A stretch of 64,000 nucleotides of DNA from Magallana gigas (taxonomy: Eukaryota). A program made the translations under genes and the position numbers. The notes under the pieces were generated by a model. The model was not told the origin of the DNA. It was given only the letters and a program-made list of their open reading frames with translations, and made no database searches. Where the stretch lies: the NCBI RefSeq assembly GCF_963853765.1, contig NC_088859.1:18538001-18602000 (forward strand), given 5' to 3'. This document shows, piece after piece, positions 12,579 to 26,211 of the stretch (position 1 is its first letter; the number at the start of each line of letters is the position of its first letter).

Positions 12579-14291
12579 ATGCGTGTCACAGACGAGTCAT
12601 TTATTTCAGAATTGACATACAATGATCAAATGTGCAGCCTATGGAGATTATATGTAAACATGTCAAATTTAAAATAGTAATTCGTAATAATCTTTTTTTT
12701 GCCAATTTACTTAGGGCCGTATTTAACATCATCCTTTATTTGAAATTCTCGAAGGAAATCTTGATATCAGTCTGGCGGAAGATCTTTGTGTTCAGTTATG
12801 ATATAATACCAAAAATAAATTTATGTAATAAATAGTTGATGTACTTCAGTTGTTGAACATACTAGATGAATTCAGCAGGCTCTCGATTTAGTTATGGCAT
12901 TAAACCTAAAAGAGAGTACAATCAAAATATACTGGTACTAGTACTAGTACTTCTTTGAAATTAATTTTTATTTATGTTGAAATCTTAACAAGTTTCAACT
13001 TACGCAGAACAGTAAGTAAAAAATATGAAAATAAGAGGAATACATGAATGTGATATATAACATATCACTAAAATTAACACGATGTAAAAAAAAATCTATT
13101 TCAAAATCTGAAAAACAAACTCTTAAAAAGAATTTAATTTGCATTACGTATACATTAAGAAAGAATATTTTGAATGTCTGCATGGGCGCACGTGTATACA
13201 CGATAATTTTATGCGCTATAATGAGCATGGGTACACCGTCAATTGGTTTAGAATGTCAGTTAGACATTCATACGGGTTTTTCCCTTGTGTATTTCTTTGA
13301 CAAAGTAGCTTGTGGCAAACAAGATAAACTGATTTAATGTGTTCATAAATACTGGTAATTTTATCAACAACAAAAGGCACAGCTAGATTGAGACTTATAC
13401 CAACGTCACACTTTATAAACAAATAATGGAGATTTGTTAACTCAATAAAGAATTCAAACCTCTGTTACTAGAATGAAACTCAATATTTGACTTTCAAATT
13501 TTGATAAAGCATCATCCTTAATGACCGTTTTAGACATTTAAAATGAAAAATATAATATTTGAAAAAAATTGAGCTCAAATCGTGTCTAAGTCTCTTTAAT
13601 CAAGTATAAAATGTGACTTTTGAAAATAATCTATATAATGTGCTAGAATAACTACATCCATACATATTTTTCTTACATTTTTAAATATAGTATTATGAAT
13701 AACTTCAATTTTAATTTTAAGATGATGAATGAAAAATAATGTCAATCCAATATATAAATTTTCCTGTATATAATGGCCGATGTGAGTAAGAAAAATGCAT
13801 ATTCTTATTTCTGTTTAACTGCAAACAACTATTGTTTAAAATTTTGATATAGAAAATTCTGGAGGAGCTTTTAATGAAATGAAAGTTAGAGATTTTTTTT
13901 TTGCTTTTTAAATTGTTAAGGATTAGTCTCCCACCATCGACTTAAAAAAACCCACCGATGCTAAATGTCCGATTCTATCAAGCCAGACTAGATGGAAATT
14001 AATTTATTCCTAGAACAAAATGTCATTAAAAGCGTAGCCAAATAGCTTTCATGCAAACATAAACAATTTCTGTAAATTTAATTGCATAAAAATTATGCCA
14101 CTGCATAGGAAACTGCCGACCCATTTTATATTGCATCACCATAAATACATGTACGAGGTGTTCTGTTTTCATTTATCAAAAATCGGTGGATAGGTACATA
14201 ATCATAAATCAATACCTAGATTTCGAAAATCACTATTGTACCTTTATATCTATTTTTAGTAAAAGGTACTTTCCGTTCAACCACGCATGGG

Positions 14292-14457
14292 TGCTCCTCG
14301 TCTATTTTTTAAATGACGAATGATGTTTGTACATGTATAAGTTTACCATGTATGTTATAGAATTGACTGATCAAGATTGATTTTGTAGCAACAAGGGTAA
14401 ACAGGGTATGCATGTATAGACTTGTCATTCGTCATTTTTAAAAATAGACGTGGAGCG
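14292..14457. repeat. Inverted repeat (about 32-bp arms) upstream of DHRS11 copy B, flanked by a 30-bp direct repeat
   Basis: GCTCCTCGTCTATTTTTTAAATGACGAATGA pairs with TCATTCGTCATTTTTAAAAATAGACGTGGAGC. TTTTTAGTAAAANGTACTTTCCGNTCAACCA occurs at about 14253 and 14491. Confidence 0.7.
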
Positions 14458-14629
14458 TCAAGGGCGAAATAGTATGAAAAGGCGCAATTATTTTTAGTAA
14501 AATGTACTTTCCGCTCAACCAAGGGTGTAGGCAAAACAACAGGAAAAGGTGCCATATCTCTTTGAATTTTGGTCACACATTTTTTCTCACTTTGTGACAA
14601 GGAAATAGTGAAAGGACGTTATTGTCAAC

Positions 14630-17600
14630 ATGGAGAAATGGGTCGGTCGGGTTGCGCTTGTTACCGGAGCCTCGGTGGGGACAGGAGCCGCCATCACACG
14701 AGCTTTGGTCAAACATGGCATGAAAGTTGTGGGCTGTGCAAGAAACGTGCAACAAATTGAGGTAACAAATCGAGTGTTTTATGCAAACGTTGTAATTGAT
14801 GCCGGTGTTGTATAGCAGTTTTTCCCTTATAGTAGCTTTTCCCCCGGAAAACCTACTATATAGTAGCCTTTCCCCCCGGGGGAAAAAGCTACTATAAAGT
14901 AGCTTTCCCCCCATAGTAGAGTTTCTCCCTCACGTTTTTGGTTCAGATTTTATAAAAAATATTTATGAAAATCCAGTCAGGATTAAAATCAATGTTTCTA
15001 CACTCTCATGTTGCATACATGTATATCTGCATTCATCTGTACAGGTTAAGTTTCGTTTTGCCGATTTATTATTTTTATAGACAATGCTGAAAGTTGAACA
15101 TGTGTGTAATGGAATTACACATAGAACTTAATTTAGGTAATTTATTGAAAAAAGTTTTACAAGTTATACACTTATATGCATAATTCTGTGTTCTGAAATT
15201 GTATAAAACGAGAATGCTTTAAGAATTTCTTGATAAATTTATCAGACTGTTTGTCTGTTTGTGAAAATTTTATCCAGGCTAAATCTCTGTTTTAGAGAAA
15301 TTTGGTTTCCGATGTTTCAGAGCCCGATTTTAAAATCCTATTATAATAATTATAGTGCATATTCTTTAGGGTCCAATGTCTCATAAACCAGAGATGACCA
15401 TATCACCATATTTTATCGTGGCAGTGGTTTACCACTTGAAGATGACTCTGAAAATTTCAGCTCTCAGGGAAGAGGCCCTTGAAGTTTCAGGGCCCAATGT
15501 TGAAAACCCCATTATAATGATTGATTAGTGTTCTATAAGTGGTGACCCGAATCTCGAATTCTAGAGATGACCAATTAACCATATTTTCACAGTGATAGTG
15601 GTATACCACTAGTAGATGACACCGAAAATTTAAGCCCCCATGCAGGGTAGGAGCCTTTGTTGTTTTCGAGCCCGATGTTTGAAATCCAATTATAAAGAAC
15701 ATGTATTTTTTAGGGCCCCATATCTCAAAAACTATAGATGACCACATGAACATATTTTTACGGTCATTTAAAAGTAAAAACATCATTTAAAAATACACAA
15801 TCACATATATTTCTTTATTAAAATGATTGAAAATTACGTTTAATTCTGCTGCTTTTTTTTTTAATTAACGAACAAAATTTTTTAAAAAGGTACGCGGGTA
15901 AAATTCATTATTCTTCAAAACATTTAATCAATTCATAAGATGACTAATGATATAATAAATAATTAAATAAAAAAATTAAAAAAAATAAATAAATCAATGA
16001 ACTTTTATTCATAAAAGGAGAAACCGAAAAAAAAAATAACCAACCTAAGCGCATATACGACTTTTTTACTTGTTAGTTGATTAGAAGAACAAGCTTATAT
16101 TTTAAAAAAAAAAGTCAGCTCATCACAATATATGTGTTGGTTGTTGTTTTTTTTTTTTTATTACCCTTGTTTAATTGTTCGAAGAAATAATATGGCACAC
16201 AAGTAAATCTTTATTGCAAAAATATGAAACAAATAGTATAATTTTGTTAGGTAATTGAATCGTATATCTTGATTTATATAGCATCGTTTTCAAAATTGTA
16301 TATTTATAAATCACGTTGCAAACTTAAAAGTGGAAAAATTAGCAAATACTGAGTGACAATATAAACATAAGGTTAGTTCAGGCTCCATTTCACATTTTCC
16401 AAAGTAACCAGCAAAGATACCGACATTGTTCTGGTTGTGAAGACATTTCATTGTTTTTTAAAATGTTTACATCATAATATCTCGCGTTTCGTAGAAATGT
16501 GCTTAAAATATGAATATGCGTAACTTTAAAACGAAATTGTAAACACTAACTTTACACATGCTTTTAATACATAATTAAAATACCAATAAACCATCAAAGT
16601 AAAACTAAAACATTTCAGTTTCTCATCATATCATTGGATCCTGTCTCCCGTTTGATATTTAGAAGAAACATATAACTGTTTTTAAGATCGTCAATTCTAA
16701 CGGTATTAATTTAAAATTGACGAAGGGATTAATACATTTCCACTTTTTATTCCCTTCCTCTACGAAAGTAAGTCAAGATTGGTCAGTTAGTTCCCTGGGA
16801 GAAGCTTATACATTGATGGTAATACATTGGAAAATTAGATTTCCAAACCGGCGTATTTTCACTCAAATGTGTTCTCACGTGTTCATAACGTCGAAGTCAA
16901 AACTGTAGATAAGCACCGATTAGATGAAAAAGATTCGAGGTATTCCGCCGAAATCCGTGTAAAAGGTGTTCCAAAAAGGGGTGAGAACAGGTGAAATAAA
17001 CGATGATGACACATGCATGTTATGAAGGCGCATGCCTTAGTTCATATTTGGGGTTGGAAAACCATGTATTTTATTCTATGTATTAATAAATGCCATAATT
17101 ATCCTTTTTTGTGAGAAATTAATATCATATCAGTTATTGCAAATTATTGTCACGAATGGCCCGCAATAAACATGGCCGGAAAGTAAAAATGGGGGAAAAT
17201 CCACTATATAGTAGGTTTTCCGTGGGGGTAATCTGGCTATAAAAAGGGGGAAAGCCCACTATTTAGTCAGCTTTCCGTGGGGGAAAAACTGCTATATAGC
17301 CATTTTTCCGGGGGGAAGAACTGCTATATAGCCATTTTTCCGGGGGAAAAGATGGCTAGGGGGAAAAGGCACTATATAACACCGGTCGACAGTGGATCAT
17401 GGTTGACCAAGATAAATAATACGAAGCAAGCTCTAAATGTTCTTTACAATGAAAAAAGTATGCATTGCATACTCATGGAAATACATGACGATTGGAGCAA
17501 TAATTTGGGCTATCGGAAAGTCAAACTGCCAAATAATGCAGTATGTAGAAGGCCCATGGACCACAATGCTCACTTGAATTTTATAACAAAAAATCGATCT

Positions 17601-20600
17601 CGTTTATATGTGTATTGGCAGGCACGTAGCAGTGATGGATGGGGGGCGGGGGCAGACTTATTCGAAATCTTGACAAGCAAAAAAAAAACCCCGCAAAACT
17701 ATTAACAGGTTCTTTTCCGTGGGAGGAAGGGGGCTTAGTTACTTTAAACTTCTGTTTTAATGTCAAAGTTGTTAATTTTTTCTGTAATTCGTAAGTGGAT
17801 GAACTCCTTTAAAATTAAATTTTCTATATCTAATTTCAAGCAAAATGTTTCTTGCATAAAAAGGAGGTGCAGGTCCCCCTCACCCTCTTCCTCCGATGCT
17901 GCATGCCTCATTGGCTTCTCTTCACACCCAGAACCGTCGGTGATTGTATGTTTTTTTTAAGCGTAAATAATGCTTATTGAAGGATATACAAGTCAGTTTT
18001 CTATGGAGTGAATGCAAAAACTGCCTTTGTCGTTTCAAGAAAACCCCTGAGTTAATTTTAAAAGTTGCTTCAATTGCCATTTTGTCACTATATTTATCAA
18101 TGAAATCTCAATTTAGAAGTGCTTTTTCATTTTAAATATTAATATGTTAAATTATTAATTTCAGTCTATACGAGATGAGCTGAAGGGTGAAAAGGGTCAG
18201 CTGATTCCAATCAAATGCGATCTCACCAAAGAAGAGGAGATTTTGGCAATGTTTAAAAAAATCCAGAAAGATCTAGGGGGTGTAGATGTGTGCATTAACA
18301 ACGCCGGACTATCACACTGTGCGCCCTTGCTGTCTGGCAGCACTGCTGACTGGAAAAACATGTTAGATGTAAATTTCAATTTTTTCAAATTTTCTCTCCT
18401 TATTTTAAAGCATTAGTTCATGAGTACTGTAATGAAAACATCAAGATTTGTTTTCTTTGAGAGAGAGAGAGAGAGAGATTGAGAGAAAGAGAATCTTTTC
18501 GAAAAATATGACTGAATAGGTTATCAAGATTTTTTAAAAAAATAATGACTGCAGCATGTCAGTCTTCAGCTGTGTTGTATATCTATTGTTACAGTGTATA
18601 GGTTAATAATTAGTAGTTATTTTTAAAGAAATACATTACTGTATTAAAGATTTAGAATTTAAACAATCTACTGTTTTAGGTTAATGTACTTGGTCTTTGC
18701 ATATGTACCAGGGAAGCTTTCCAACAAATGCAGAAAAACAAAGTTGATGATGGTCACATCATTCTAATGAATAGGTAATTGATTTTATATTCATTCAATG
18801 TAGGGAAAGTGAATAAGATTTTTATAACTTATAATTATACATAAAATATTACATGAAACTACACTAGACAATTGTCCTTTATGGTTGTATGGGACGCGTC
18901 CATATTATTACGTGATTCCTATCGAAATAAACCATAAAATGAAGTATAACATTATAAATGTTTTATTTCCCAATGTTGTTACCTAACAGCGTAGTGCAGT
19001 GGGTTAGAGCATGACTTGCAAATCTGTAAGTCATGAGCTCGAATCTCGCTGGGGCTTTTACAAATTTTACCTTTTTGAAAATTTTGGGTCAAAAATTGCA
19101 TAATTTGAAAATTCTAAACCGGTGAAAATATTTTGATTATAATGGGTTTTTTTTAAATTCAACATTAATCTCGACAGGTGTCCCATACCACATTAGCCAC
19201 AGGGAAAAAAAACCATTTCACACCTACACTTGGATACAGTTGGAAGGAATATTTTATATAGTTATATATTGTTATAATCAATATATGTAATGATATTTAT
19301 TTTTAGCTTGTCTGGACACCGTGTCGTTCCAAATGCAGAGGGTCATTTTTACTCTGTCACAAAATGTGCTGTGTCTGCAATTCTGGAGGGTATCAGGAAC
19401 GAACTTCATATGCTGAAATCTCACATAAGGGTTTCGGTGAGAAACTGGGGTTTTTAATTGTACATGTATACTGTCGAATTAAGAGTACATCCGCATGTAC
19501 AGAGATATATACAGATTTTCCTTTCTTTCTTTATGATTTGTAAAATCCATATAGATTCCATGGATTCTGAAACTAAAGAAATGGACTTATGTTTAAATTC
19601 TTTTTGTTCAACCTTTGAATTTTTAATTAGAAGGATAAGTAATTCTAATCTGTATACTAGTATTACCTGCTTTATCATTTAATCAATCATATGGGGTATA
19701 TTTCTGCACATGCAGACTATAAGCCAAGAGATGGCAAAAACAGTTATTTGAAACATGCAATTTGAAAAATTAAGAAGAAGGGAAGAGAATTTATGCAGAA
19801 TATAAGGCAGATAACTCTATTTCTCCTTGATCTTCTTAAATAGTCTGTCAGTCCAGGGATAGTGGCAACAGAATTCCATCAAAGAATGTATAAAAGTCCA
19901 GAAGTTGGGAAGAGAATTTGTAGTCGTATGAAGGTATGTATTGGTAAAATAAACAGTGTTTGAATTAATGATATTTACAGGTTTAAATGAAATGTAATCA
20001 TCCCGTTTTACATTTATAGAGAAAAAAATTGATGAATTCTCTGAAATGTCTTGATTTGCTTTCCAATAAATTGTAAACACATTACATCCCCTCTCCATTT
20101 AATTTGTACATTTTTACTTTTTTTATACAAATAATTTATTTGTTAAAAAAAAGAGAAAGATATAAATCCCAGGTTAATCCATCTTCGCTAGCCAAGGGTT
20201 TACGATCCACTCTGCTCCTCTACAACAGAGTGGATCGTAAACCCTGGGCTAGCGAAGATGAGGTTAATCAAGGTCATTGAAATAAGAAAGGTTCCATATG
20301 TATATTCAAAACATGATTATCATAATGACTGTGTCTTAATTAATTGAAAAATGCAAATTATCATTATGCACAAGAGTCAACCTTGATCAATATTGATACA
20401 GTGACCACTTTAGTACTTGAAGCACAGACTTTTAATTGATTTTTCAGTGTTTGGAAGGAGAGGATTTGGCCAATGCAGTCATTTATGCATTAAGTGCACC
20501 AGCACATGTTCAGGTTAGTGTCCTAATTTGAATATTTAAGTATCTTCTTCTATTTGAAAAACCACACCAGTAATGAATTAACATCACAGTTTTTGCATGA

Positions 20601-20862
20601 ATATCATGCAAAATTTGTAGGATGTTTTAAAGAAATGATGGTTTAAAACATTAGATGTATGATATTCCGATGGAAATCATTTCAAAATCACAGGAAGTTT
20701 TTGCACGAAATGTGTGTGTTACTTTACGTCTCTTTCTCATGCAAAGATTTTACATGAAATTCATGCAATATAACGAAGAAGCATGCATATTAAATATTAC
20801 GTAAAATTTCTTTTTCACAGGTTCATGACATCCTGGTGAGATCAATTGAACAGAAAACGTAA
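14630..20862 (+). CDS. DHRS11: DHRS11-like SDR, copy B, about 252 aa; exons 14630-14761, 18165-18368, 18680-18774, 19307-19436, 19844-19933, 20448-20513, 20821-20862
   Basis: Same exon sizes as copy A (132, 204, 95, 130, 90, 66, 42 nt), GT-AG introns and an open frame. Motifs TGASVGTG, NNAG and YSVTK; ends VHDILVRSIEQKT*. Confidence 0.9.
14802..17385. mobile_element. About 2.6-kb foldback-like TIR element with subterminal repeat arrays in intron 1 of copy B
   Basis: Left end CCGGTGTTGTATAG; reverse complement of the right end CCGGTGTTATATAG. Both ends carry ~30-bp units of the type GGGGGAAAAACTGCTATATAGCCATTTTTCC (14815-14915 and 17190-17375). No TSD identified. Confidence 0.65.
15385..15760. 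repeat. Diverged ~172-bp tandem repeat (2-3 units)
   Basis: GATGACC...CCATATTTT...GTGGT.TACCACT blocks recur at 15393, 15566 and 15737. Confidence 0.6.
17619..17909. mobile_element. MITE with CAGGCACGTAGCA termini
   Basis: Left CAGGCACGTAGCA, right TGCTGCATGCCTC; ATTGG flanks both ends (possible TSD). Confidence 0.6.
18987..19055 (+). mobile_element. tRNA-derived SINE head in intron 3 of copy B
   Basis: A-box-like TAGTGCAGTGGGTTAGAGC and B-box-like GAGCTCGAATCTC. No intact acceptor stem. Absent from the homologous intron of copy A. Confidence 0.55.
19716..19806 (+). pseudogene. Inactivated copy of alternative exon 5a in DHRS11 copy B (pseudo-exon)
   Basis: Homologous to 10767-10856 but 91 nt long (net +1). 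Reads TISQEMAKTVI* (PG changed to QE, early TGA), and the donor is GC instead of GT (tataag|gcagat). Confidence 0.88.
20180..20260. mobile_element. 81-bp hairpin micro-MITE with 9-bp TSD
   Basis: 35-bp arms CATCTTCGCTAGCCAAGGGTTTACGATCCACTCTG and CAGAGTGGATCGTAAACCCTGGGCTAGCGAAGATG (1 mismatch) with an 11-nt loop. AGGTTAATC is duplicated at 20171-20179 and 20261-20269. Confidence 0.92.
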
Positions 20863-21467
20863 TTCAAACTTAACAAAGAGACAAGCAGTTATTTGATTGT
20901 TGACAATATTAATATTATGTAATTTCGGAAATTAATTGTTATTTTTGAAAATTTCTGAACGTACATGACCATGGGGTTTTCCTAATGTATACTCCTATCT
21001 ATTTTGTATAGTATGAATCAGTTTAAGTGCATGGTTCTCTTGAACAGCAGAAACTGTTTTACTTTTTCTCATTACAATAAGTGTATTTCAGTAGTATCAC
21101 CTGTAGTATTTTCTTATTCCCCCGATTCTGCTAAATCTCAGAGGAGTGAAAGGATGATATCCCTAAACATGGAAACGGCTCCTTTTTATATACAATGAAC
21201 TATATACAAAACCAACCATGCTTTTGATAAAACAAGAGTGAATAAGAGTAATAAATGTAAACATCCTTGTTACTGTTGACATCTTTGATAATTTTTTATT
21301 GAATTGATTGATGCATTTTCGATGATTTTGTACATTCTGTAAAGATGAATTTTGTTCTGGTTTGTGACTTATTCAAATAAATAAAATTGAACAGAATGGG
21401 TTGACCTTGGTACAGTAGACGATATGTATTGTACATGAAACAGATCGTTCAATAGTCTTTTACAATC

Positions 21468-21637
21468 CACGTGACTATATATCGTCAAATTCTCACCAAC
21501 CATGGGGAAACTTAGTAATTAGAAAAAATCCGTTGACAATACAACTTACAAATGATTAATTTCATAAATGAAGGTATAGTAGATGGCATGTAAAGTCGCG
21601 TCGAACACGCTTAATATCGAAATATATGTCACGTGAC
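21468..21637. promoter_or_regulatory. E-box cluster downstream of DHRS11 copy B (duplicate of 12399-12578)
   Basis: CACGTGAC at 21468 and GTCACGTGAC at 21628 in homologous context. Confidence 0.4.
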
Positions 21638-22170
21638 ACGCCTCGCACAGACGAGTAACACTATGAAATAAGTTTAGCGCGTTTCTATTTATTTTAGAAG
21701 TTACACAGTGATGTAGAATTTTCTCTTTTTACATACAGATTTTGGTAAAATACATTAAAGTAGAAAAATGCATGTACCTCAGTGTGCTCGTGTGTATTTG
21801 AAATTTCAAATGTGGGGGGAGCTAAAGGTCTACGGGGAGATTGTATGTAATCAGCGTACCCCTACCATAAATATTGATTGTGACATTACTTATTTTTTAA
21901 TCATGAAGAAATATTCTATCTCTCTAATTTTACCACTCTTTTAAAATTCTGTTTGCCACTGTTTCATAATCTTAGAATCTGAAATTATGTCTAAGAAACT
22001 TAAGCAAAATGCATTTATATTTTTATTAAATACCACCAAACTATTAATTTAAAAGTATAATACACAACATAAAATCGCAGCAGATGTAATTATATATAAT
22101 TTACAGTAATATGCCTAGGCTTTGTGCCTTTCTTAATATATGCATGTACGTGTAATTTTTAAACATAGTG

Positions 22171-23067
22171 CTGTAAAACGAGAAAATTTGGCGCAAACAT
22201 ATTTACACAAGTGCCAATACATTCGTGCAATTAAATGTCAATGCTCGCACCTCTTACCTTAAAGAGGTTAAATAAAATTTCTTCTTGTTTGATCAATTGT
22301 TAATTCTGTGTTTACATAAGCACGTGATTTTCAACACGGCAACATAAACTGTTGTTGAGAACAATACACTTTCAAATCGTCAGTGAATAGGTATAAAAAC
22401 ATCATTTACTGGCGATGGGCTATCATTTGTAAACAAGTTTGAGTATCGCACTTTTAATTTAACGTAGCGACTGAGATAACACTAGAAATAAAAGTACATG
22501 CGAGGGAAATCAAATGCTATTTACTCTAATCCACATGCTATATACCTATGCTATTGTATATACAAATAGAGTTGTCCCTTCGGAATAACGTCTTATTATT
22601 CTTATTATTAATCAAGTACTGATAGTACTGAAAAGCGCTAACCCAGCTTCTGTATGTATATAACATATATATGTATATAACATTTCAGATTCTGTATATT
22701 TCCTCATCACTGCGTGGCAGCCCCTGCAATGATGTATGTAAGCCCCCTTCATTAAATTCACAATACCCCGTACATTAGATTCACAATAGCCCGTGCAGTT
22801 ATGTGCATAAACCCCTGAAACTGGTTTAAATGATGTATACTTCTGCTCATAGGGGGCGGTTATTCGATGCATCGGAAGTAGAAGTCTAACGACAATAAAG
22901 CGCTGAGTATGCTTAGCGCTTTAAAAAGGGGCTGAAGTTATCGTTTTGTAACTTGAAATTTCATTCAAATGTAGAAAATCGTTGGTGCACTATTAATTTT
23001 AGGTCTCAAGGGCAGTTGGGCCAAAGGCGCTAAAATTTGTACAGCGCCATACTTTCTCGTTTTACAG
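22171..23067. mobile_element. About 900-bp TA-target TIR element inserted in the 3' end of the TRIM-like CDS
   Basis: Left (TG)|CTGTAAAACGAGAAAATTTGGCGC; reverse complement of the right end (TA)|CTGTAAAACGAGAAAGTATGGCGC. Confidence 0.85.
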
Positions 23068-24731
23068 TATTTAATTTTTTTCACTTTACATGTCTTACAC
23101 TCAGCAACAAAGAGATTGTCTTTGGAATCCATACACAATCCCCATGGACGCTGTATATCACAGTCGTCAATGTAGCGGAGGAACTGTCCGTCCTGCTCAA
23201 AAATATGGATGCGGTTGTTCCAATAGTCTGCTGTCAGTATCCGACTCTGGCTGTCGGTAGTGATACCGACTGGACAAAATGATTCATTGGTAGTAGAAGA
23301 AGGACCAGTGTAGGTAAACCGGAGTTTCCCGGCCTGATTGACCACCACTACTGCCCCGGCTCTATAATCAGCTACGCAGATGTCAAGGTTCTTGTTCTCG
23401 CTGATATACTTGGAGAAATCGCCAAGTGAATAAAGCGGCTCACCATTATCATTTGATTGAATGCTTTGTTTTTCTTTGAAGTCTGGGCTTGAGTAACGCA
23501 CGACTTTTACTTGTTGATAATCATCACTGTCGATGATAACAAGGAAATCGCCGGCAGAAGAAACACATATACTACGAGGTCTCCATCCCTGAAGTTTGGC
23601 AACTCTCTGCAACTTTCTATCTTTCGATATGTTCACTGTTCTTTCATTGTAATCAGTATAAACTGGATACCCACTTGTCACTGCTATGGCCCCTGGTATG
23701 TTTCCTGTTTTGGTTTCAAATGACTTTACTAGTTTTCCCTGGAGATTGACGAGTCTCATGATTTTTTCATTTCCATGCGTCAAGATATAATCATCGCTTA
23801 GACAAGAAACGCCATGTAATTCACTTTGGTTACCATACTCGGTTTTTATTTCTGTAATGATCCGTGGTTCCTCAAGGAGTGGTTTTTCAGAGGGAAAGGT
23901 CTCAGCGTCAGGGGAATCTATTGTGTAACCATCATTATCGCATGTTATACAAAATGCTGACAAAGCACCAAACTGCTGATAAAGCTGTTCTTTATTTATC
24001 TTCTGAGAAGTCAAGCTTGGTAAAGATATTTTGAGTTTAGGAGGCAATCTTCTGAAATCGGCATTCCTGGATTTGTAAGCAAAGACATGAGAGGCATCAT
24101 TGGAATTAAGCAAACCATTCAAATCAGTAATGTTTTGAGTAATTTTAGAAATAGTTTGTGCTATTTCGTCCTCCTGCCTATTTAGAACAGCCAAGTATTT
24201 TGAATCTATTTTATCAAGAGCAGATTTCAGTTTTTTCAAAATGTTATCTATTTCTTTTCGCAAGTCTTCTTCTTGTTTTTCTAAAGCTATTGTCAACTTT
24301 TTAGAGTTGGTATTGATGTTATCTTTCTGAACTGAAATATAAGAGGCAATCTCTTTATATTTTGGATAAATGGATAGCTCAAACTCTTTTAAATCTCTTC
24401 GTATTACTTCTTTCTTATTTTCAATGTGTTTTAAAAACTCAACAAATTCATGGCCTCTATGATCCTCTGAAGAAGCACATGTTGCACATATAGGAATGTC
24501 ACATAGTACGCAATAAAGTTCACATATTTTCGAGGAATGTTTTTGACACTTTGCTGTAGATGCACGCATCTTAAAGGGCACCACCTTGTGGTCTTTAAAT
24601 TCGCTTGAGAGATGTTCTCCCTCACATTCTTTACACAGATGTATGTGACAAATGTCGCAGTACATAGGTGTAACAGGGGTCTTACAGAGATGACACCGTA
24701 ACACATCCTGGGCACAGCGCTTGGGATCCAT
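22965..24731 (-). CDS. Intronless RING-less TRIM-like protein (two B-boxes, coiled coil, NHL-type beta-propeller), 588 aa
   Basis: Starts MDPKRCAQDVLRCHLC (ATG at 24731; the ORF track starts at an upstream TTG). B-boxes CDICHIHLCKECEGEH and CQKHSSKICELYCVLCDIPICATCASSEDHRGH, a heptad-rich middle, and NHL-like repeats (PVGITTDSQSRILTADYWNNRIHI; PWGLCMDSKDNLFVAE). Confidence 0.9.
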   Translation of the reverse strand: MDPKRCAQDVLRCHLCKTPVTPMYCDICHIHLCKECEGEHLSSEFKDHKVVPFKMRASTAKCQKHSSKICELYCVLCDIPICATCASSEDHRGHEFVEFLKHIENKKEVIRRDLKEFELSIYPKYKEIASYISVQKDNINTNSKKLTIALEKQEEDLRKEIDNILKKLKSALDKIDSKYLAVLNRQEDEIAQTISKITQNITDLNGLLNSNDASHVFAYKSRNADFRRLPPKLKISLPSLTSQKINKEQLYQQFGALSAFCITCDNDGYTIDSPDAETFPSEKPLLEEPRIITEIKTEYGNQSELHGVSCLSDDYILTHGNEKIMRLVNLQGKLVKSFETKTGNIPGAIAVTSGYPVYTDYNERTVNISKDRKLQRVAKLQGWRPRSICVSSAGDFLVIIDSDDYQQVKVVRYSSPDFKEKQSIQSNDNGEPLYSLGDFSKYISENKNLDICVADYRAGAVVVVNQAGKLRFTYTGPSSTTNESFCPVGITTDSQSRILTADYWNNRIHIFEQDGQFLRYIDDCDIQRPWGLCMDSKDNLFVAECKTCKVKKIKYCKTRKYGAVQILAPLAQLPLRPKINSAPTIFYI

Positions 24732-26211
24732 TGTCAAACACGTTCATTCATACTTTGAATAAAAAATATAGTTGTAAAAACAGAAATTAATTAATACAGT
24801 TAAATGATCGAAAATTGGTAGGTCTACAAAAATCAGGTTTGAATGACGAAGTAAATAGATAAGGCATGTTTTCTATAGAAAATTAAAAATTAAGATAAAA
24901 TACGCAAAATTCAACGCAGCATTTACAGATATGCAAAACGAAGGTTTGAACAGGTTAAGCACTAGATTGAAAAAGTTAAAAATACGCAGTTTTGTATACA
25001 CACAAGTACCAACATGTATCAACTAAGAATCAATAATCGAAAATTTAAACACTTACTTGCTAATGCAATCCAATCCAATTGCAGATCTTTCAGTTCCACT
25101 TATGATCCAAAGTTAATAACCCTAATTTGATCAGAAATAACGTATAATATGCTAATATAGTTTTATTACAACATATATGGAATAGATTTGGTATCAATAC
25201 TTACAGATAAAAAATTACAAATCTCTTCAACCAAAGATTTATTTTGTGAGGTATCTTCACAGAAGTCTCTTTTAAACACCACGTGATGTGTTAAGGAACG
25301 GGTACTGTGCTATAAAACTGCTGAGGTATTTTTTGCAGATATCTTTGTGTTTCGTTCGTTTTCTTAAGCCAGCTTGAATGTCTCAGCCTTATTGTGTAAT
25401 GAATACAAAACTGCTTTAGAATCAGCATTTTTTTTCTTTTTTTGTTAAAAACTGCATCTGTAGTGTTTAATGGGGTCAAGGACGCAGGCTGTTTGACGTT
25501 TAAAGGGCAAACACCATTCCTATTTCATAATTATATGTATTCTGCGCATGCTCAAGCATAAAAGTAATCTGTAGTAGCAAAACTTCTTAACCATTCTTTA
25601 CTGAGTTTTTAAAAGCATATTATCATATACAGCGCACAAAAGCGTGACCATGTATAGAATATGGTAAGGATCTTGTTTACAAAGAACTGGGAACTCTTCA
25701 TCTGAACAGTGTTTCCCTTGTAACTATATATACCAGCAAATAAAAGATGCACTACAAAGAATAGAGCTGTCGGCTGTGTGATGTGATTGTAGAAATTTTT
25801 TAATCCAATTGTAGAAATCCTAGACTTCCTTATGTTGGCCTGCTATGGGTAAATATATAAACAAGATAATATTGTATCAAAAAAAGAAACATCATGCAAA
25901 CTAACATTTAACAGCAAAATTTTAAATCAAAACAGAATAACAAATTAACATAATTTGTAGATTGAAAGGTTGATTGGTTGAGTGGTTTACATTTAATATC
26001 ATTTTGGACTTTTCTAAAGCCTCTATATTATCTTTAAGAGTAACAGAGGTATACGTAAAAACTTTGTCAAATAGTTAAGAAACATAAAATCATGGTAAAA
26101 ATGATAATTATATAAATTAATGTACAAATTTGGACATATTCAATCCTGTTGTCTCCAGATCATAGTATACAATTGTTTTGGCGTTACCAACATCTGATGG
26201 TCTAGGAATTA

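What the first reader, a model, noticed from the sequence alone, without database searches (positions are those of the whole stretch)
19716..19933. Duplicate gene has killed one of the two alternative exons (isoform loss after duplication)
In copy B, exon 5a has a net +1 frameshift with an early TGA, its conserved PG changed to QE, and a GT-to-GC donor. Exon 5b (19844-19933) is intact, and the spacer is 37 nt. Copy A keeps both exons. This looks like a snapshot of an alternatively spliced gene resolving into a single-isoform paralogue (subfunctionalisation).
Basis: partly seen in the sequence, partly recalled or inferred. Interest (0 to 1): 0.75.

Follow-up and report, generated by a model that had tools for sequence, protein, structure and literature searches.

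The report
Oyster enzyme duplicate lost alternative exon
In the Pacific oyster, the newer of two neighbouring DHRS11 enzyme genes has let one of its two interchangeable exons decay and makes only one protein form; the second DHRS11 gene of three other oyster lineages has lost the same exon through different mutations.

Summary
The window holds two tandem DHRS11-like dehydrogenase genes, A (8421-11836) and B (14630-20862). A has two intact 90-nt homologous exons, 5a and 5b, 36 nt apart. In B, 5a (19716-19806) has a +1 insertion, TGA at 19749-19751, a TAA in the old frame, PG>QE and a GC donor. B's 5b is intact.

These are not errors or haplotypes. The C. angulata assembly carries the same lesions, and A/B synonymous divergence is 0.38. 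Spliced RNA contigs join B exon 4 directly to 5b. RefSeq lists one isoform for B and 5a and 5b isoforms for A.

"Subfunctionalisation" is only half right. A keeps both exons and still expresses 5b, so the loss is one-sided. All 19 polarisable residue changes lie on B's branch.

New here: the second DHRS11 gene of C. virginica, Saccostrea echinata and Ostrea edulis also has a dead 5a and a live 5b, each with different lesions.

One-sided loss after duplication is a known kind (Abascal 2015). The scan had already noted A's exon pair on this same window (s1-395813).

The parts
8421..11836 (+). Gene A (DHRS11, RefSeq isoforms X1/X2). Coding exons: E1 8421-8552, E2 9461-9664, E3 10047-10141, E4 10348-10477, 5a 10767-10856, 5b 10893-10982, E6 11272-11337, E7 11795-11836 (stop).
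   Evidence: One search gives the models, all with AG/GT sites; both the 5a and 5b versions translate to 252 aa. One search shows Pfam adh_short matches exon by exon. One search shows identity to XP_011433720 (5b) and XP_011433721 (5a).
10767..10982 (+). A's intact homologous exon pair: 5a (10767-10856) and 5b (10893-10982), with a 36-nt spacer. They encode the PG motif and the loop that follows it.
   Evidence: Among intact oyster copies 5a has omega 0.03-0.14 at dS 0.7-1.3.
14422..21344 (+). Gene B (DHRS11-like, XP_034313004.1) as covered by mRNA contig L001. Coding exons: E1 14630-14761, E2 18165-18368, E3 18680-18774, E4 19307-19436, 5b 19844-19933, E6 20448-20513, E7 20821-20862 (stop). 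The 5'UTR starts at or before 14422 and the 3'UTR reaches at least 21344.
   Evidence: One search gives an intact 252-aa reading frame with 5b. One search shows L001 and L002 are 98-100% identical to these blocks and skip 19437-19843.
19716..19806 (+). B pseudo-exon 5a, 91 nt.
   Evidence: There are 11 substitutions against A, 9 of them shared with C. angulata B. All 9 change the residue or create a stop, and all lie on B's branch.
19725..19730 (+). CAA GAG (Q E) in place of the conserved P G of the SDR PG motif.
   Evidence: codon table.
19744..19751 (+). The +1 insertion (within 19744-19746) and the resulting TGA (19749-19751).
19771..19773 (+). TAA in the original reading frame (AAA in A and in all intact copies).
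19807..19843 (+). 37-nt spacer. Its first two bases are GC where A has the GT donor.
19844..19933 (+). B exon 5b, intact and used in mRNA.
   Evidence: 100% identity to L001 and L002.

Best explanation
A and B are tandem paralogues of the oyster DHRS11 short-chain dehydrogenase. The ancestral gene carried two homologous 90-nt exons, 5a and 5b. Each encodes the PG motif and the 25 residues after it, the segment that in classical SDRs forms the substrate-binding loop. The 5a donor and the 5b acceptor are only 36-37 nt apart, too close to be spliced to each other, so a transcript should take one exon or the other (inferred from general knowledge of minimal intron size).

After a duplication within the Magallana lineage (C. 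gigas, C. angulata and at least one further Crassostrea species), copy B stopped using 5a. The exon then drifted neutrally. It acquired a frameshift, stops in both the new and the old frame, loss of the PG motif and a GC donor. B is now a constitutive 5b-only gene. It is transcribed, correctly spliced and still under purifying selection, but it evolves much faster than A.

A keeps both exons and still makes the 5b form. The event is therefore one-sided isoform loss, a specialisation of the new copy, and not a reciprocal partition of isoforms.

The same outcome arose separately in C. virginica, Saccostrea echinata and Ostrea edulis. In each, the second DHRS11 gene has a 5a remnant disabled by its own lesions and an intact 5b.

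Shown here: the lesions, their presence in a second assembly, B's expression and exon 4 to 5b splicing, selection on 5a in intact copies, the rate asymmetry, and the lineage-specific lesions. Inferred: the steric mutual exclusion, the effect on substrate range, and the reason 5a is always the exon lost.
For: - Lesions and models.
- Same lesions in C. angulata B (L003).
- B mRNA: L001 and L002 match B at 98-100% (A at 84-93%) and go from 19436 to 19844.
- Annotation: the B cluster has 71 members and every listed one has 5b. RefSeq gives one isoform for B and X1 (5b) and X2 (5a) for A.
- A still expresses 5b: L009 and L010 match A exons 2-7 at 96-100%.
- Selection: A/B whole-CDS dS 0.38, dN 0.051, omega 0.14. 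For 5a among intact copies omega is 0.03-0.14.
- Asymmetry: 19 of 19 polarisable residue differences lie on B's branch, p = 4e-6.
- B's 5a shows 11 of 90 substitutions, all on B's branch. This is close to half of the roughly 20% A/B intron divergence.
- Other lineages:
  - C. virginica g2 has a -1 deletion and a GT>TT donor.
  - S. echinata g2 has a +1 in an A run, a TAG, and has lost its acceptor AG.
  - O. edulis g2 has a 20-nt and a 3-nt deletion and an AG>TG acceptor.
- No lesion is shared between genera.
- Paralogues group by lineage in protein and DNA trees with 96-100% support. Their dS is 0.10-0.38, against more than 1 between genera.
- Introns align within lineages but not between them.
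- Family: human DHRS11 structure 1XG5 at E = 2.7e-86; Pfam adh_short.
Against:
- No Logan-derived protein with a C. gigas 5a was found. Use of A's 5a in C. gigas therefore rests on the RefSeq model and on conservation.
- Independence of the four losses could be overstated if the pair is ancient and homogenised by gene conversion. The same A-then-B order occurs in Magallana, Ostrea and Saccostrea, and copy 2 shares several residue states across lineages (G168A in three; L193I, Q199H and A221G in two).
- The S. echinata +1 lies in a homopolymer and could be an assembly error, although that exon also lacks its acceptor AG.
Confidence: 0.85

Rival explanations
1. Reciprocal subfunctionalisation in progress. 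The two isoforms are being divided between the copies, B taking 5b and A moving toward 5a.
For: B has lost 5a. Reciprocal separation of homologous exons after duplication is documented in vertebrates (PMC4494069, PMC4417111).
Against: A's 5b is intact, with canonical splice sites. A-type mRNAs carry 5b and RefSeq X1 uses it. A has no polarisable residue change at all on its branch. In none of the four lineages has copy 1 lost 5b.
Confidence: 0.08
2. One ancient duplication in the oyster ancestor, with the two copies kept similar by gene conversion. The 5b-only copies of the four lineages would then be orthologues, and selected sites would resist conversion.
For: The order is copy 1 then copy 2, in the same orientation, in C. 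gigas, O. edulis and S. echinata. Copy 2 shares identical derived residues across lineages: G168A in three; L193I, Q199H and A221G in gigas and virginica; H203Y and P247S in gigas and Ostrea.
Against: Paralogue dS differs between lineages (0.38, 0.10, 0.13) and is low in every exon block. Introns and flanks align within lineages over the whole unit. In C. virginica copy 2 is inverted and lies on the other side of copy 1 relative to the DUF4795 neighbour. No 5a lesion is shared. Each dead 5a carries its own lineage's synonymous variants, so even under this model the exon was disabled separately each time. S. cucullata's dual-exon gene also has V151, A168 and H199, so these states are not specific to 5b-only copies.
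Confidence: 0.25
3. B's 5a is kept as a regulated 'poison' exon. Its inclusion would introduce a premature stop and lower B's output through nonsense-mediated decay.
For: Its acceptor and polypyrimidine tract are unchanged from A. GC donors can be used by the spliceosome (general knowledge).
Against: The exon has changed at about the neutral rate, with 9 of 9 shared changes altering the residue or creating a stop. gigas and angulata B differ further within it. No assembled transcript contains it. In the other lineages the splice sites themselves are destroyed.
Confidence: 0.04
4. Artefact: the lesions are sequencing errors, or A and B are uncollapsed haplotypes of a single locus.
For: Oyster genomes are highly heterozygous, and the C. 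angulata assembly shows extra A-like copies.
Against: There are five separate lesions, all reproduced in an independent assembly. A and B lie in tandem on one contig, with dS 0.38, different intron sizes and different 5' regions. Each has its own mRNAs.
Confidence: 0.01

Closest known systems
Fate of mutually exclusive homologous exons after gene duplication (Abascal, Tress and Valencia 2015, PMC4494069)
   Same: A gene with two homologous alternative exons duplicates and one paralogue loses one of the exons. [quoted passage not shown] That is the situation here.
   Different: Those cases are vertebrate genes, mostly after whole-genome duplication and hundreds of millions of years old. Here the duplication is a young tandem one in a mollusc, the dead exon is still readable, and the same exon was lost repeatedly in related lineages.
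Splice-form subfunctionalisation (Lambert et al. 2015, PMC4417111; the teleost CALU pair in PMC4494069)
   Same: Duplication reduces alternative splicing in a daughter gene.
   Different: That model needs complementary loss in the two copies. Here copy A keeps both exons.
Mutual exclusion by a too-short intron between alternative exons (alpha-tropomyosin exons 2/3; from my own knowledge, not checked in a paper here)
   Same: The donor of the first alternative exon lies 36-37 nt from the acceptor of the second, too close for the two to be spliced together.
   Different: Not tested experimentally in the oyster. RefSeq also lists 282-aa models containing both exons, which would need a 36-nt intron.
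Human DHRS11 (PDB 1XG5)
   Same: B aligns over residues 1-246 at E = 2.7e-86 and has the same cofactor and catalytic motifs.
   Different: No alternative exon 5 was seen among the vertebrate DHRS11 proteins returned. The oyster enzymes' substrates are unknown.

Membership tests
Classical short-chain dehydrogenase/reductase, DHRS11 group | N-terminal TGxxxGxG cofactor motif and NNAG motif | tested here: met
   B's translation has TGASVGTG and NNAG. A's exons 1-4 match Pfam adh_short profile positions 1-174.
Classical short-chain dehydrogenase/reductase, DHRS11 group | Catalytic Ser and YxxxK, followed by the PG motif | tested here: met
   B has SLSGH, YSVTK, and SPG in 5b. In B's 5a the PG motif is replaced by QE.
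Classical short-chain dehydrogenase/reductase, DHRS11 group | Closest relatives are DHRS11 proteins | tested here: met
   Human DHRS11 structure 1XG5 at E = 2.7e-86. The named hits among the best 120 listed at E <= 1e-60 are almost all DHRS11 or DHRS11-like.
Classical short-chain dehydrogenase/reductase, DHRS11 group | NADP(H)-dependent oxidoreductase activity | not testable with these tools
   Needs an enzyme assay.
Mutually exclusive homologous exon pair (tandem exon duplication) | Two adjacent exons of equal length and phase with recognisable homology | tested here: met
   In A both exons are 90 nt and phase 0, and share SPG..TEF and other residues. The pair is conserved in C. virginica, both Saccostrea species and O. 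edulis.
Mutually exclusive homologous exon pair (tandem exon duplication) | Both exons have working splice sites and open frames | tested here: not met
   Met for A. For B, 5a has a GC donor, a frameshift and stops, so B no longer has a working pair.
Mutually exclusive homologous exon pair (tandem exon duplication) | Transcripts contain one exon or the other | tested here: inconclusive
   5b-only mRNAs were seen for both A and B. The 5a form is known only from RefSeq models. No reads could be laid.
Reciprocal splice-isoform separation (subfunctionalisation) after duplication | The ancestor had both exons and one daughter lost one | tested here: met
   Outgroup lineages have both exons, and B lost 5a.
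Reciprocal splice-isoform separation (subfunctionalisation) after duplication | The other daughter lost the complementary exon | tested here: not met
   A's 5b is intact and expressed. The same holds for copy 1 in the other lineages.

The most novel reading that the evidence does not exclude
Oyster DHRS11 is a replicated natural experiment. Each time the gene is copied, the new copy discards lid exon 5a, keeps 5b, evolves faster, and repeatedly takes the same replacements in the flanking exons and in 5b (G168A, L193I, Q199H, A221G, changes at F216). This would mean that serving two alternative lids constrains the enzyme core, and that duplication releases the constraint in a predictable direction (escape from adaptive conflict). 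The choice of which exon dies would then be selected rather than random.
Probability: 0.2. Interest if true: 0.75.

Novelty: new member of a known kind. Interest (0 to 1): 0.5.

Why it matters
How alternative splicing and gene duplication trade off is mostly known from ancient vertebrate duplicates, where the lost exon has vanished. Here the dead exon is still readable, the duplicate is young and tandem, and related oysters offer at least four separate instances with the same outcome. That makes this a tractable system for three questions:

- Is isoform loss after duplication neutral or directed?
- How quickly does it follow duplication?
- Is an enzyme core shaped by having to work with two alternative substrate lids?

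For annotation, B should be treated as a single-isoform gene and 19716-19806 as a pseudo-exon.

Tried and rejected
- **Read-level test.** There are no junction counts and no population check.
- **5a-type exon search.** A search restricted to the 5a segment of P0069 returned only three cluster representatives (S. echinata, C. virginica, O. edulis) and no RNA-derived C. gigas protein. This is not evidence of absence, because isoforms merge in 90% clusters.
- **Locus look-ups.** Look-ups for P0007, P0006 and P0009 found nothing, since only the longest product of a gene is on record. The loci were reached through P0186, P0082, P0012 and P0185 instead.
- **Literature.** A search for DHRS11 plus oyster found no paper.
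- **Co-adaptation after 5a loss.** I considered this as the cause of the parallel replacements and marked it down. S. cucullata's dual-exon gene already has V151, A168 and H199, and V151 is not shared by C. angulata B.
- **B-type 5' ends on A-type mRNAs.** L009 and L010 start with B's 5'UTR. The switch lies inside a 43-nt stretch identical in A and B, so I read this as a chimeric k-mer assembly and not as biology.
- **Joined models.** Searches used single-exon references or proteins returned by the tools. Exons were joined only inside local scripts, for translation and dN/dS.
- **Masked run.** The first homologue search used the open frame 9407-9889, which reads the N run as X, with scoring restricted to exon 2. 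The N run was not filled or looked up.

Full report
**What is there.** The window is AT-rich eukaryotic DNA. A self-comparison finds a tandem repeat of a gene-sized unit, about 7161-12597 against 13896-21656. Identity is 69-92% and includes introns and flanks.

Exact models give two seven-coding-exon genes on the + strand, with identical exon lengths (132, 204, 95, 130, 90, 66, 42 nt) and canonical splice sites.
- Gene A runs 8421-11836.
- Gene B runs 14630-20862.

A's exons match Pfam adh_short in order. B's protein aligns with human DHRS11 (PDB 1XG5) at E = 2.7e-86. Homologue searches name the organism. A equals C. gigas XP_011433720 and XP_011433721, and B equals XP_034313004.1 apart from two polymorphic residues.

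**The observation.** A carries two homologous 90-nt exons, 5a (10767-10856) and 5b (10893-10982), both open and both with AG and GT sites, 36 nt apart. In B the 5a homologue (19716-19806) is 91 nt. Its lesions are:
- a +1 insertion at 19744-19746, giving TGA at 19749-19751;
- Q E for P G at 19725-19730;
- a GC donor at 19807-19808;

B's 5b (19844-19933) is intact and the spacer is 37 nt.

**Not an artefact.** The independent C. angulata assembly (L003) has A-like and B copies in tandem, and its B carries the same insertion, Q E, TAA and GC donor. A and B differ by dS 0.38. They have different intron sizes and different 5' regions. Haplotypes and sequencing errors are excluded as far as assemblies can show.

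**Expression.**
- Logan contigs L001 and L002, from two runs, are spliced B mRNAs. They are 98-100% identical to B's exons (84-93% to A's) and pass from 19436 directly to 19844.
- The B protein cluster has 71 members, many from RNA assemblies. All 15 listed carry B's 5b, and RefSeq gives B one isoform in both C. gigas and C. angulata.
- A-type mRNAs L009 and L010 carry A's exon 4, 5b and exon 6, so A still makes the 5b form.
- RefSeq lists a 5a isoform for A, but I found no RNA-derived C. gigas protein with 5a.

**Is 5a a real coding exon?** Yes. Among the intact copies of C. gigas, C. virginica, S. echinata and O. edulis, dS is 0.7-1.3 but omega is only 0.03-0.14.

**How B's 5a evolved.** Against A it has 11 substitutions. 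Nine are shared with C. angulata B, and all nine change the residue or create a stop. At every one of these sites A matches the outgroups, so all changes lie on B's branch. Eleven of 90 is about half of the roughly 20% A/B intron divergence. This is what neutral drift since about the time of duplication would give, so the loss was early and is not a fresh snapshot.

**Fate of the two genes.** Overall omega for A against B is 0.14, so both remain constrained. The change is one-sided, however: 19 of 19 polarisable residue differences are on B's branch (p = 4e-6). They are concentrated in exon 4, 5b and exons 6-7. A has lost nothing. The case is therefore one-sided isoform loss in a fast-evolving new copy, not reciprocal subfunctionalisation. 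Abascal et al. (PMC4494069) name exactly this intermediate class.

**Other oysters.** RefSeq lists one multi-isoform and one single-isoform DHRS11 gene in C. virginica, S. echinata and O. edulis. I fetched the loci. In every case the single-isoform gene has an intact 5b preceded by a 5a remnant:
- C. virginica g2: a -1 deletion and a GT>TT donor.
- S. echinata g2: +1 in an A run, a TAG, and the acceptor AG lost.
- O. edulis g2: 20-nt and 3-nt deletions and an AG>TG acceptor.

No lesion is shared between genera, and each remnant carries its own lineage's synonymous variants. Paralogues group by lineage in protein and DNA trees (96-100% support). Their dS values are 0.10, 0.13 and 0.38, against more than 1 between genera. 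Introns align within lineages but not between them. In C. virginica the two genes are head to head, and copy 2 lies between copy 1 and the conserved DUF4795 neighbour. In C. gigas and Saccostrea copy 1 is next to DUF4795.

The simplest reading is separate duplications. Even under an ancient pair homogenised by gene conversion, the exon must have been disabled separately each time. Four of four losses hitting 5a is suggestive but not significant on its own (0.125 two-sided).

**An unexplained pattern.** Copy 2 repeatedly shows the same replacements relative to copy 1:
- G168A in three lineages;
- L193I, Q199H and A221G in gigas and virginica;
- H203Y and P247S in gigas and Ostrea;
- F216 changed in three lineages.

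gigas and virginica share 7 changed positions in the last four exons, where about 2.4 are expected. This could be convergent re-tuning of a 5b-only enzyme, or old B-type sites surviving gene conversion. Against a simple link to 5a loss, S. cucullata's dual-exon gene has V151, A168 and H199, and V151 is absent from C. angulata B.

**Mechanism, as inferred.** Exon 5 encodes the PG motif and the following loop, the substrate-binding region of classical SDRs (general SDR knowledge; alignment to 1XG5). A can therefore make two enzymes with different lids, while B makes one. The 36-37-nt spacer should prevent 5a-to-5b splicing. The 282-aa 'both exons' models in the databases would need a 36-nt intron and are doubtful.

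**Verdict.** The phenomenon is a known kind, and B's single-isoform status is already implicit in RefSeq. The readable pseudo-exon and its repeated, separate loss across oysters are the new part.

Noticed in passing
L003 (C. angulata) 954-7846, 8346-17410, 19048-26192: The C. angulata assembly holds A1-B-A2. A2 lacks the stretch equal to window 10191-10760, which includes exon 4. RefSeq XP_052688399-401 appear to join A1's exons 1-4 to A2's exons 5-7. A1's 5a has P>Q (the same C>A change as in B) and E>K, but its frame is intact.
   Followed up: partly
L009 1-440 and L010 1-310 against window 14321-14761 and 8403-8552: A-type mRNA contigs begin with B's 5'UTR and switch to A inside a 43-nt stretch identical in both genes' exon 1. 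This is probably a chimeric k-mer assembly, but a recombinant allele is not excluded.
   Followed up: partly
window 14762-18164, ORF 17232-17702: B's intron 1 is 3.4 kb against 0.9 kb in A, and it contains a 157-aa open frame. This may be a mobile-element insertion.
   Followed up: no
window 20170-20270: A near-perfect palindrome of about 100 nt lies in B's intron between 5b and exon 6. It has no counterpart in A and looks like a miniature inverted-repeat element.
   Followed up: no
window about 1015-5208, minus strand: A DUF4795-family gene is a conserved neighbour of the DHRS11 locus in C. virginica, S. echinata and S. cucullata.
   Followed up: partly
B exon 4, window 19307-19436, against L003 14725-14854: Between C. 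gigas and C. angulata, B's exon 4 has 8 replacement and 3 silent differences (omega 0.85). The window's B also differs from RefSeq XP_034313004.1 at two residues of this exon. This exon of B is unusually variable.
   Followed up: partly
proteins P0018, P0021, P0023 (Ruditapes philippinarum): DHRS11-like isoforms X1, X2 and X4 of this clam differ in the same 30-residue segment. Alternative exon 5 may be wider among bivalves than oysters.
   Followed up: no
window 9736-9879: An N run lies inside A's intron 2. It was left as it is, not filled or looked up.
   Followed up: no
L011-L016 (Logan RNA contigs, six runs): A B-like mRNA (P0059) from another Crassostrea species shares B's diagnostic residues, but at the DNA level it is a mosaic, nearer to A in exon 3 and nearer to B in exons 1 and 6. 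The species is not identified.
   Followed up: partly
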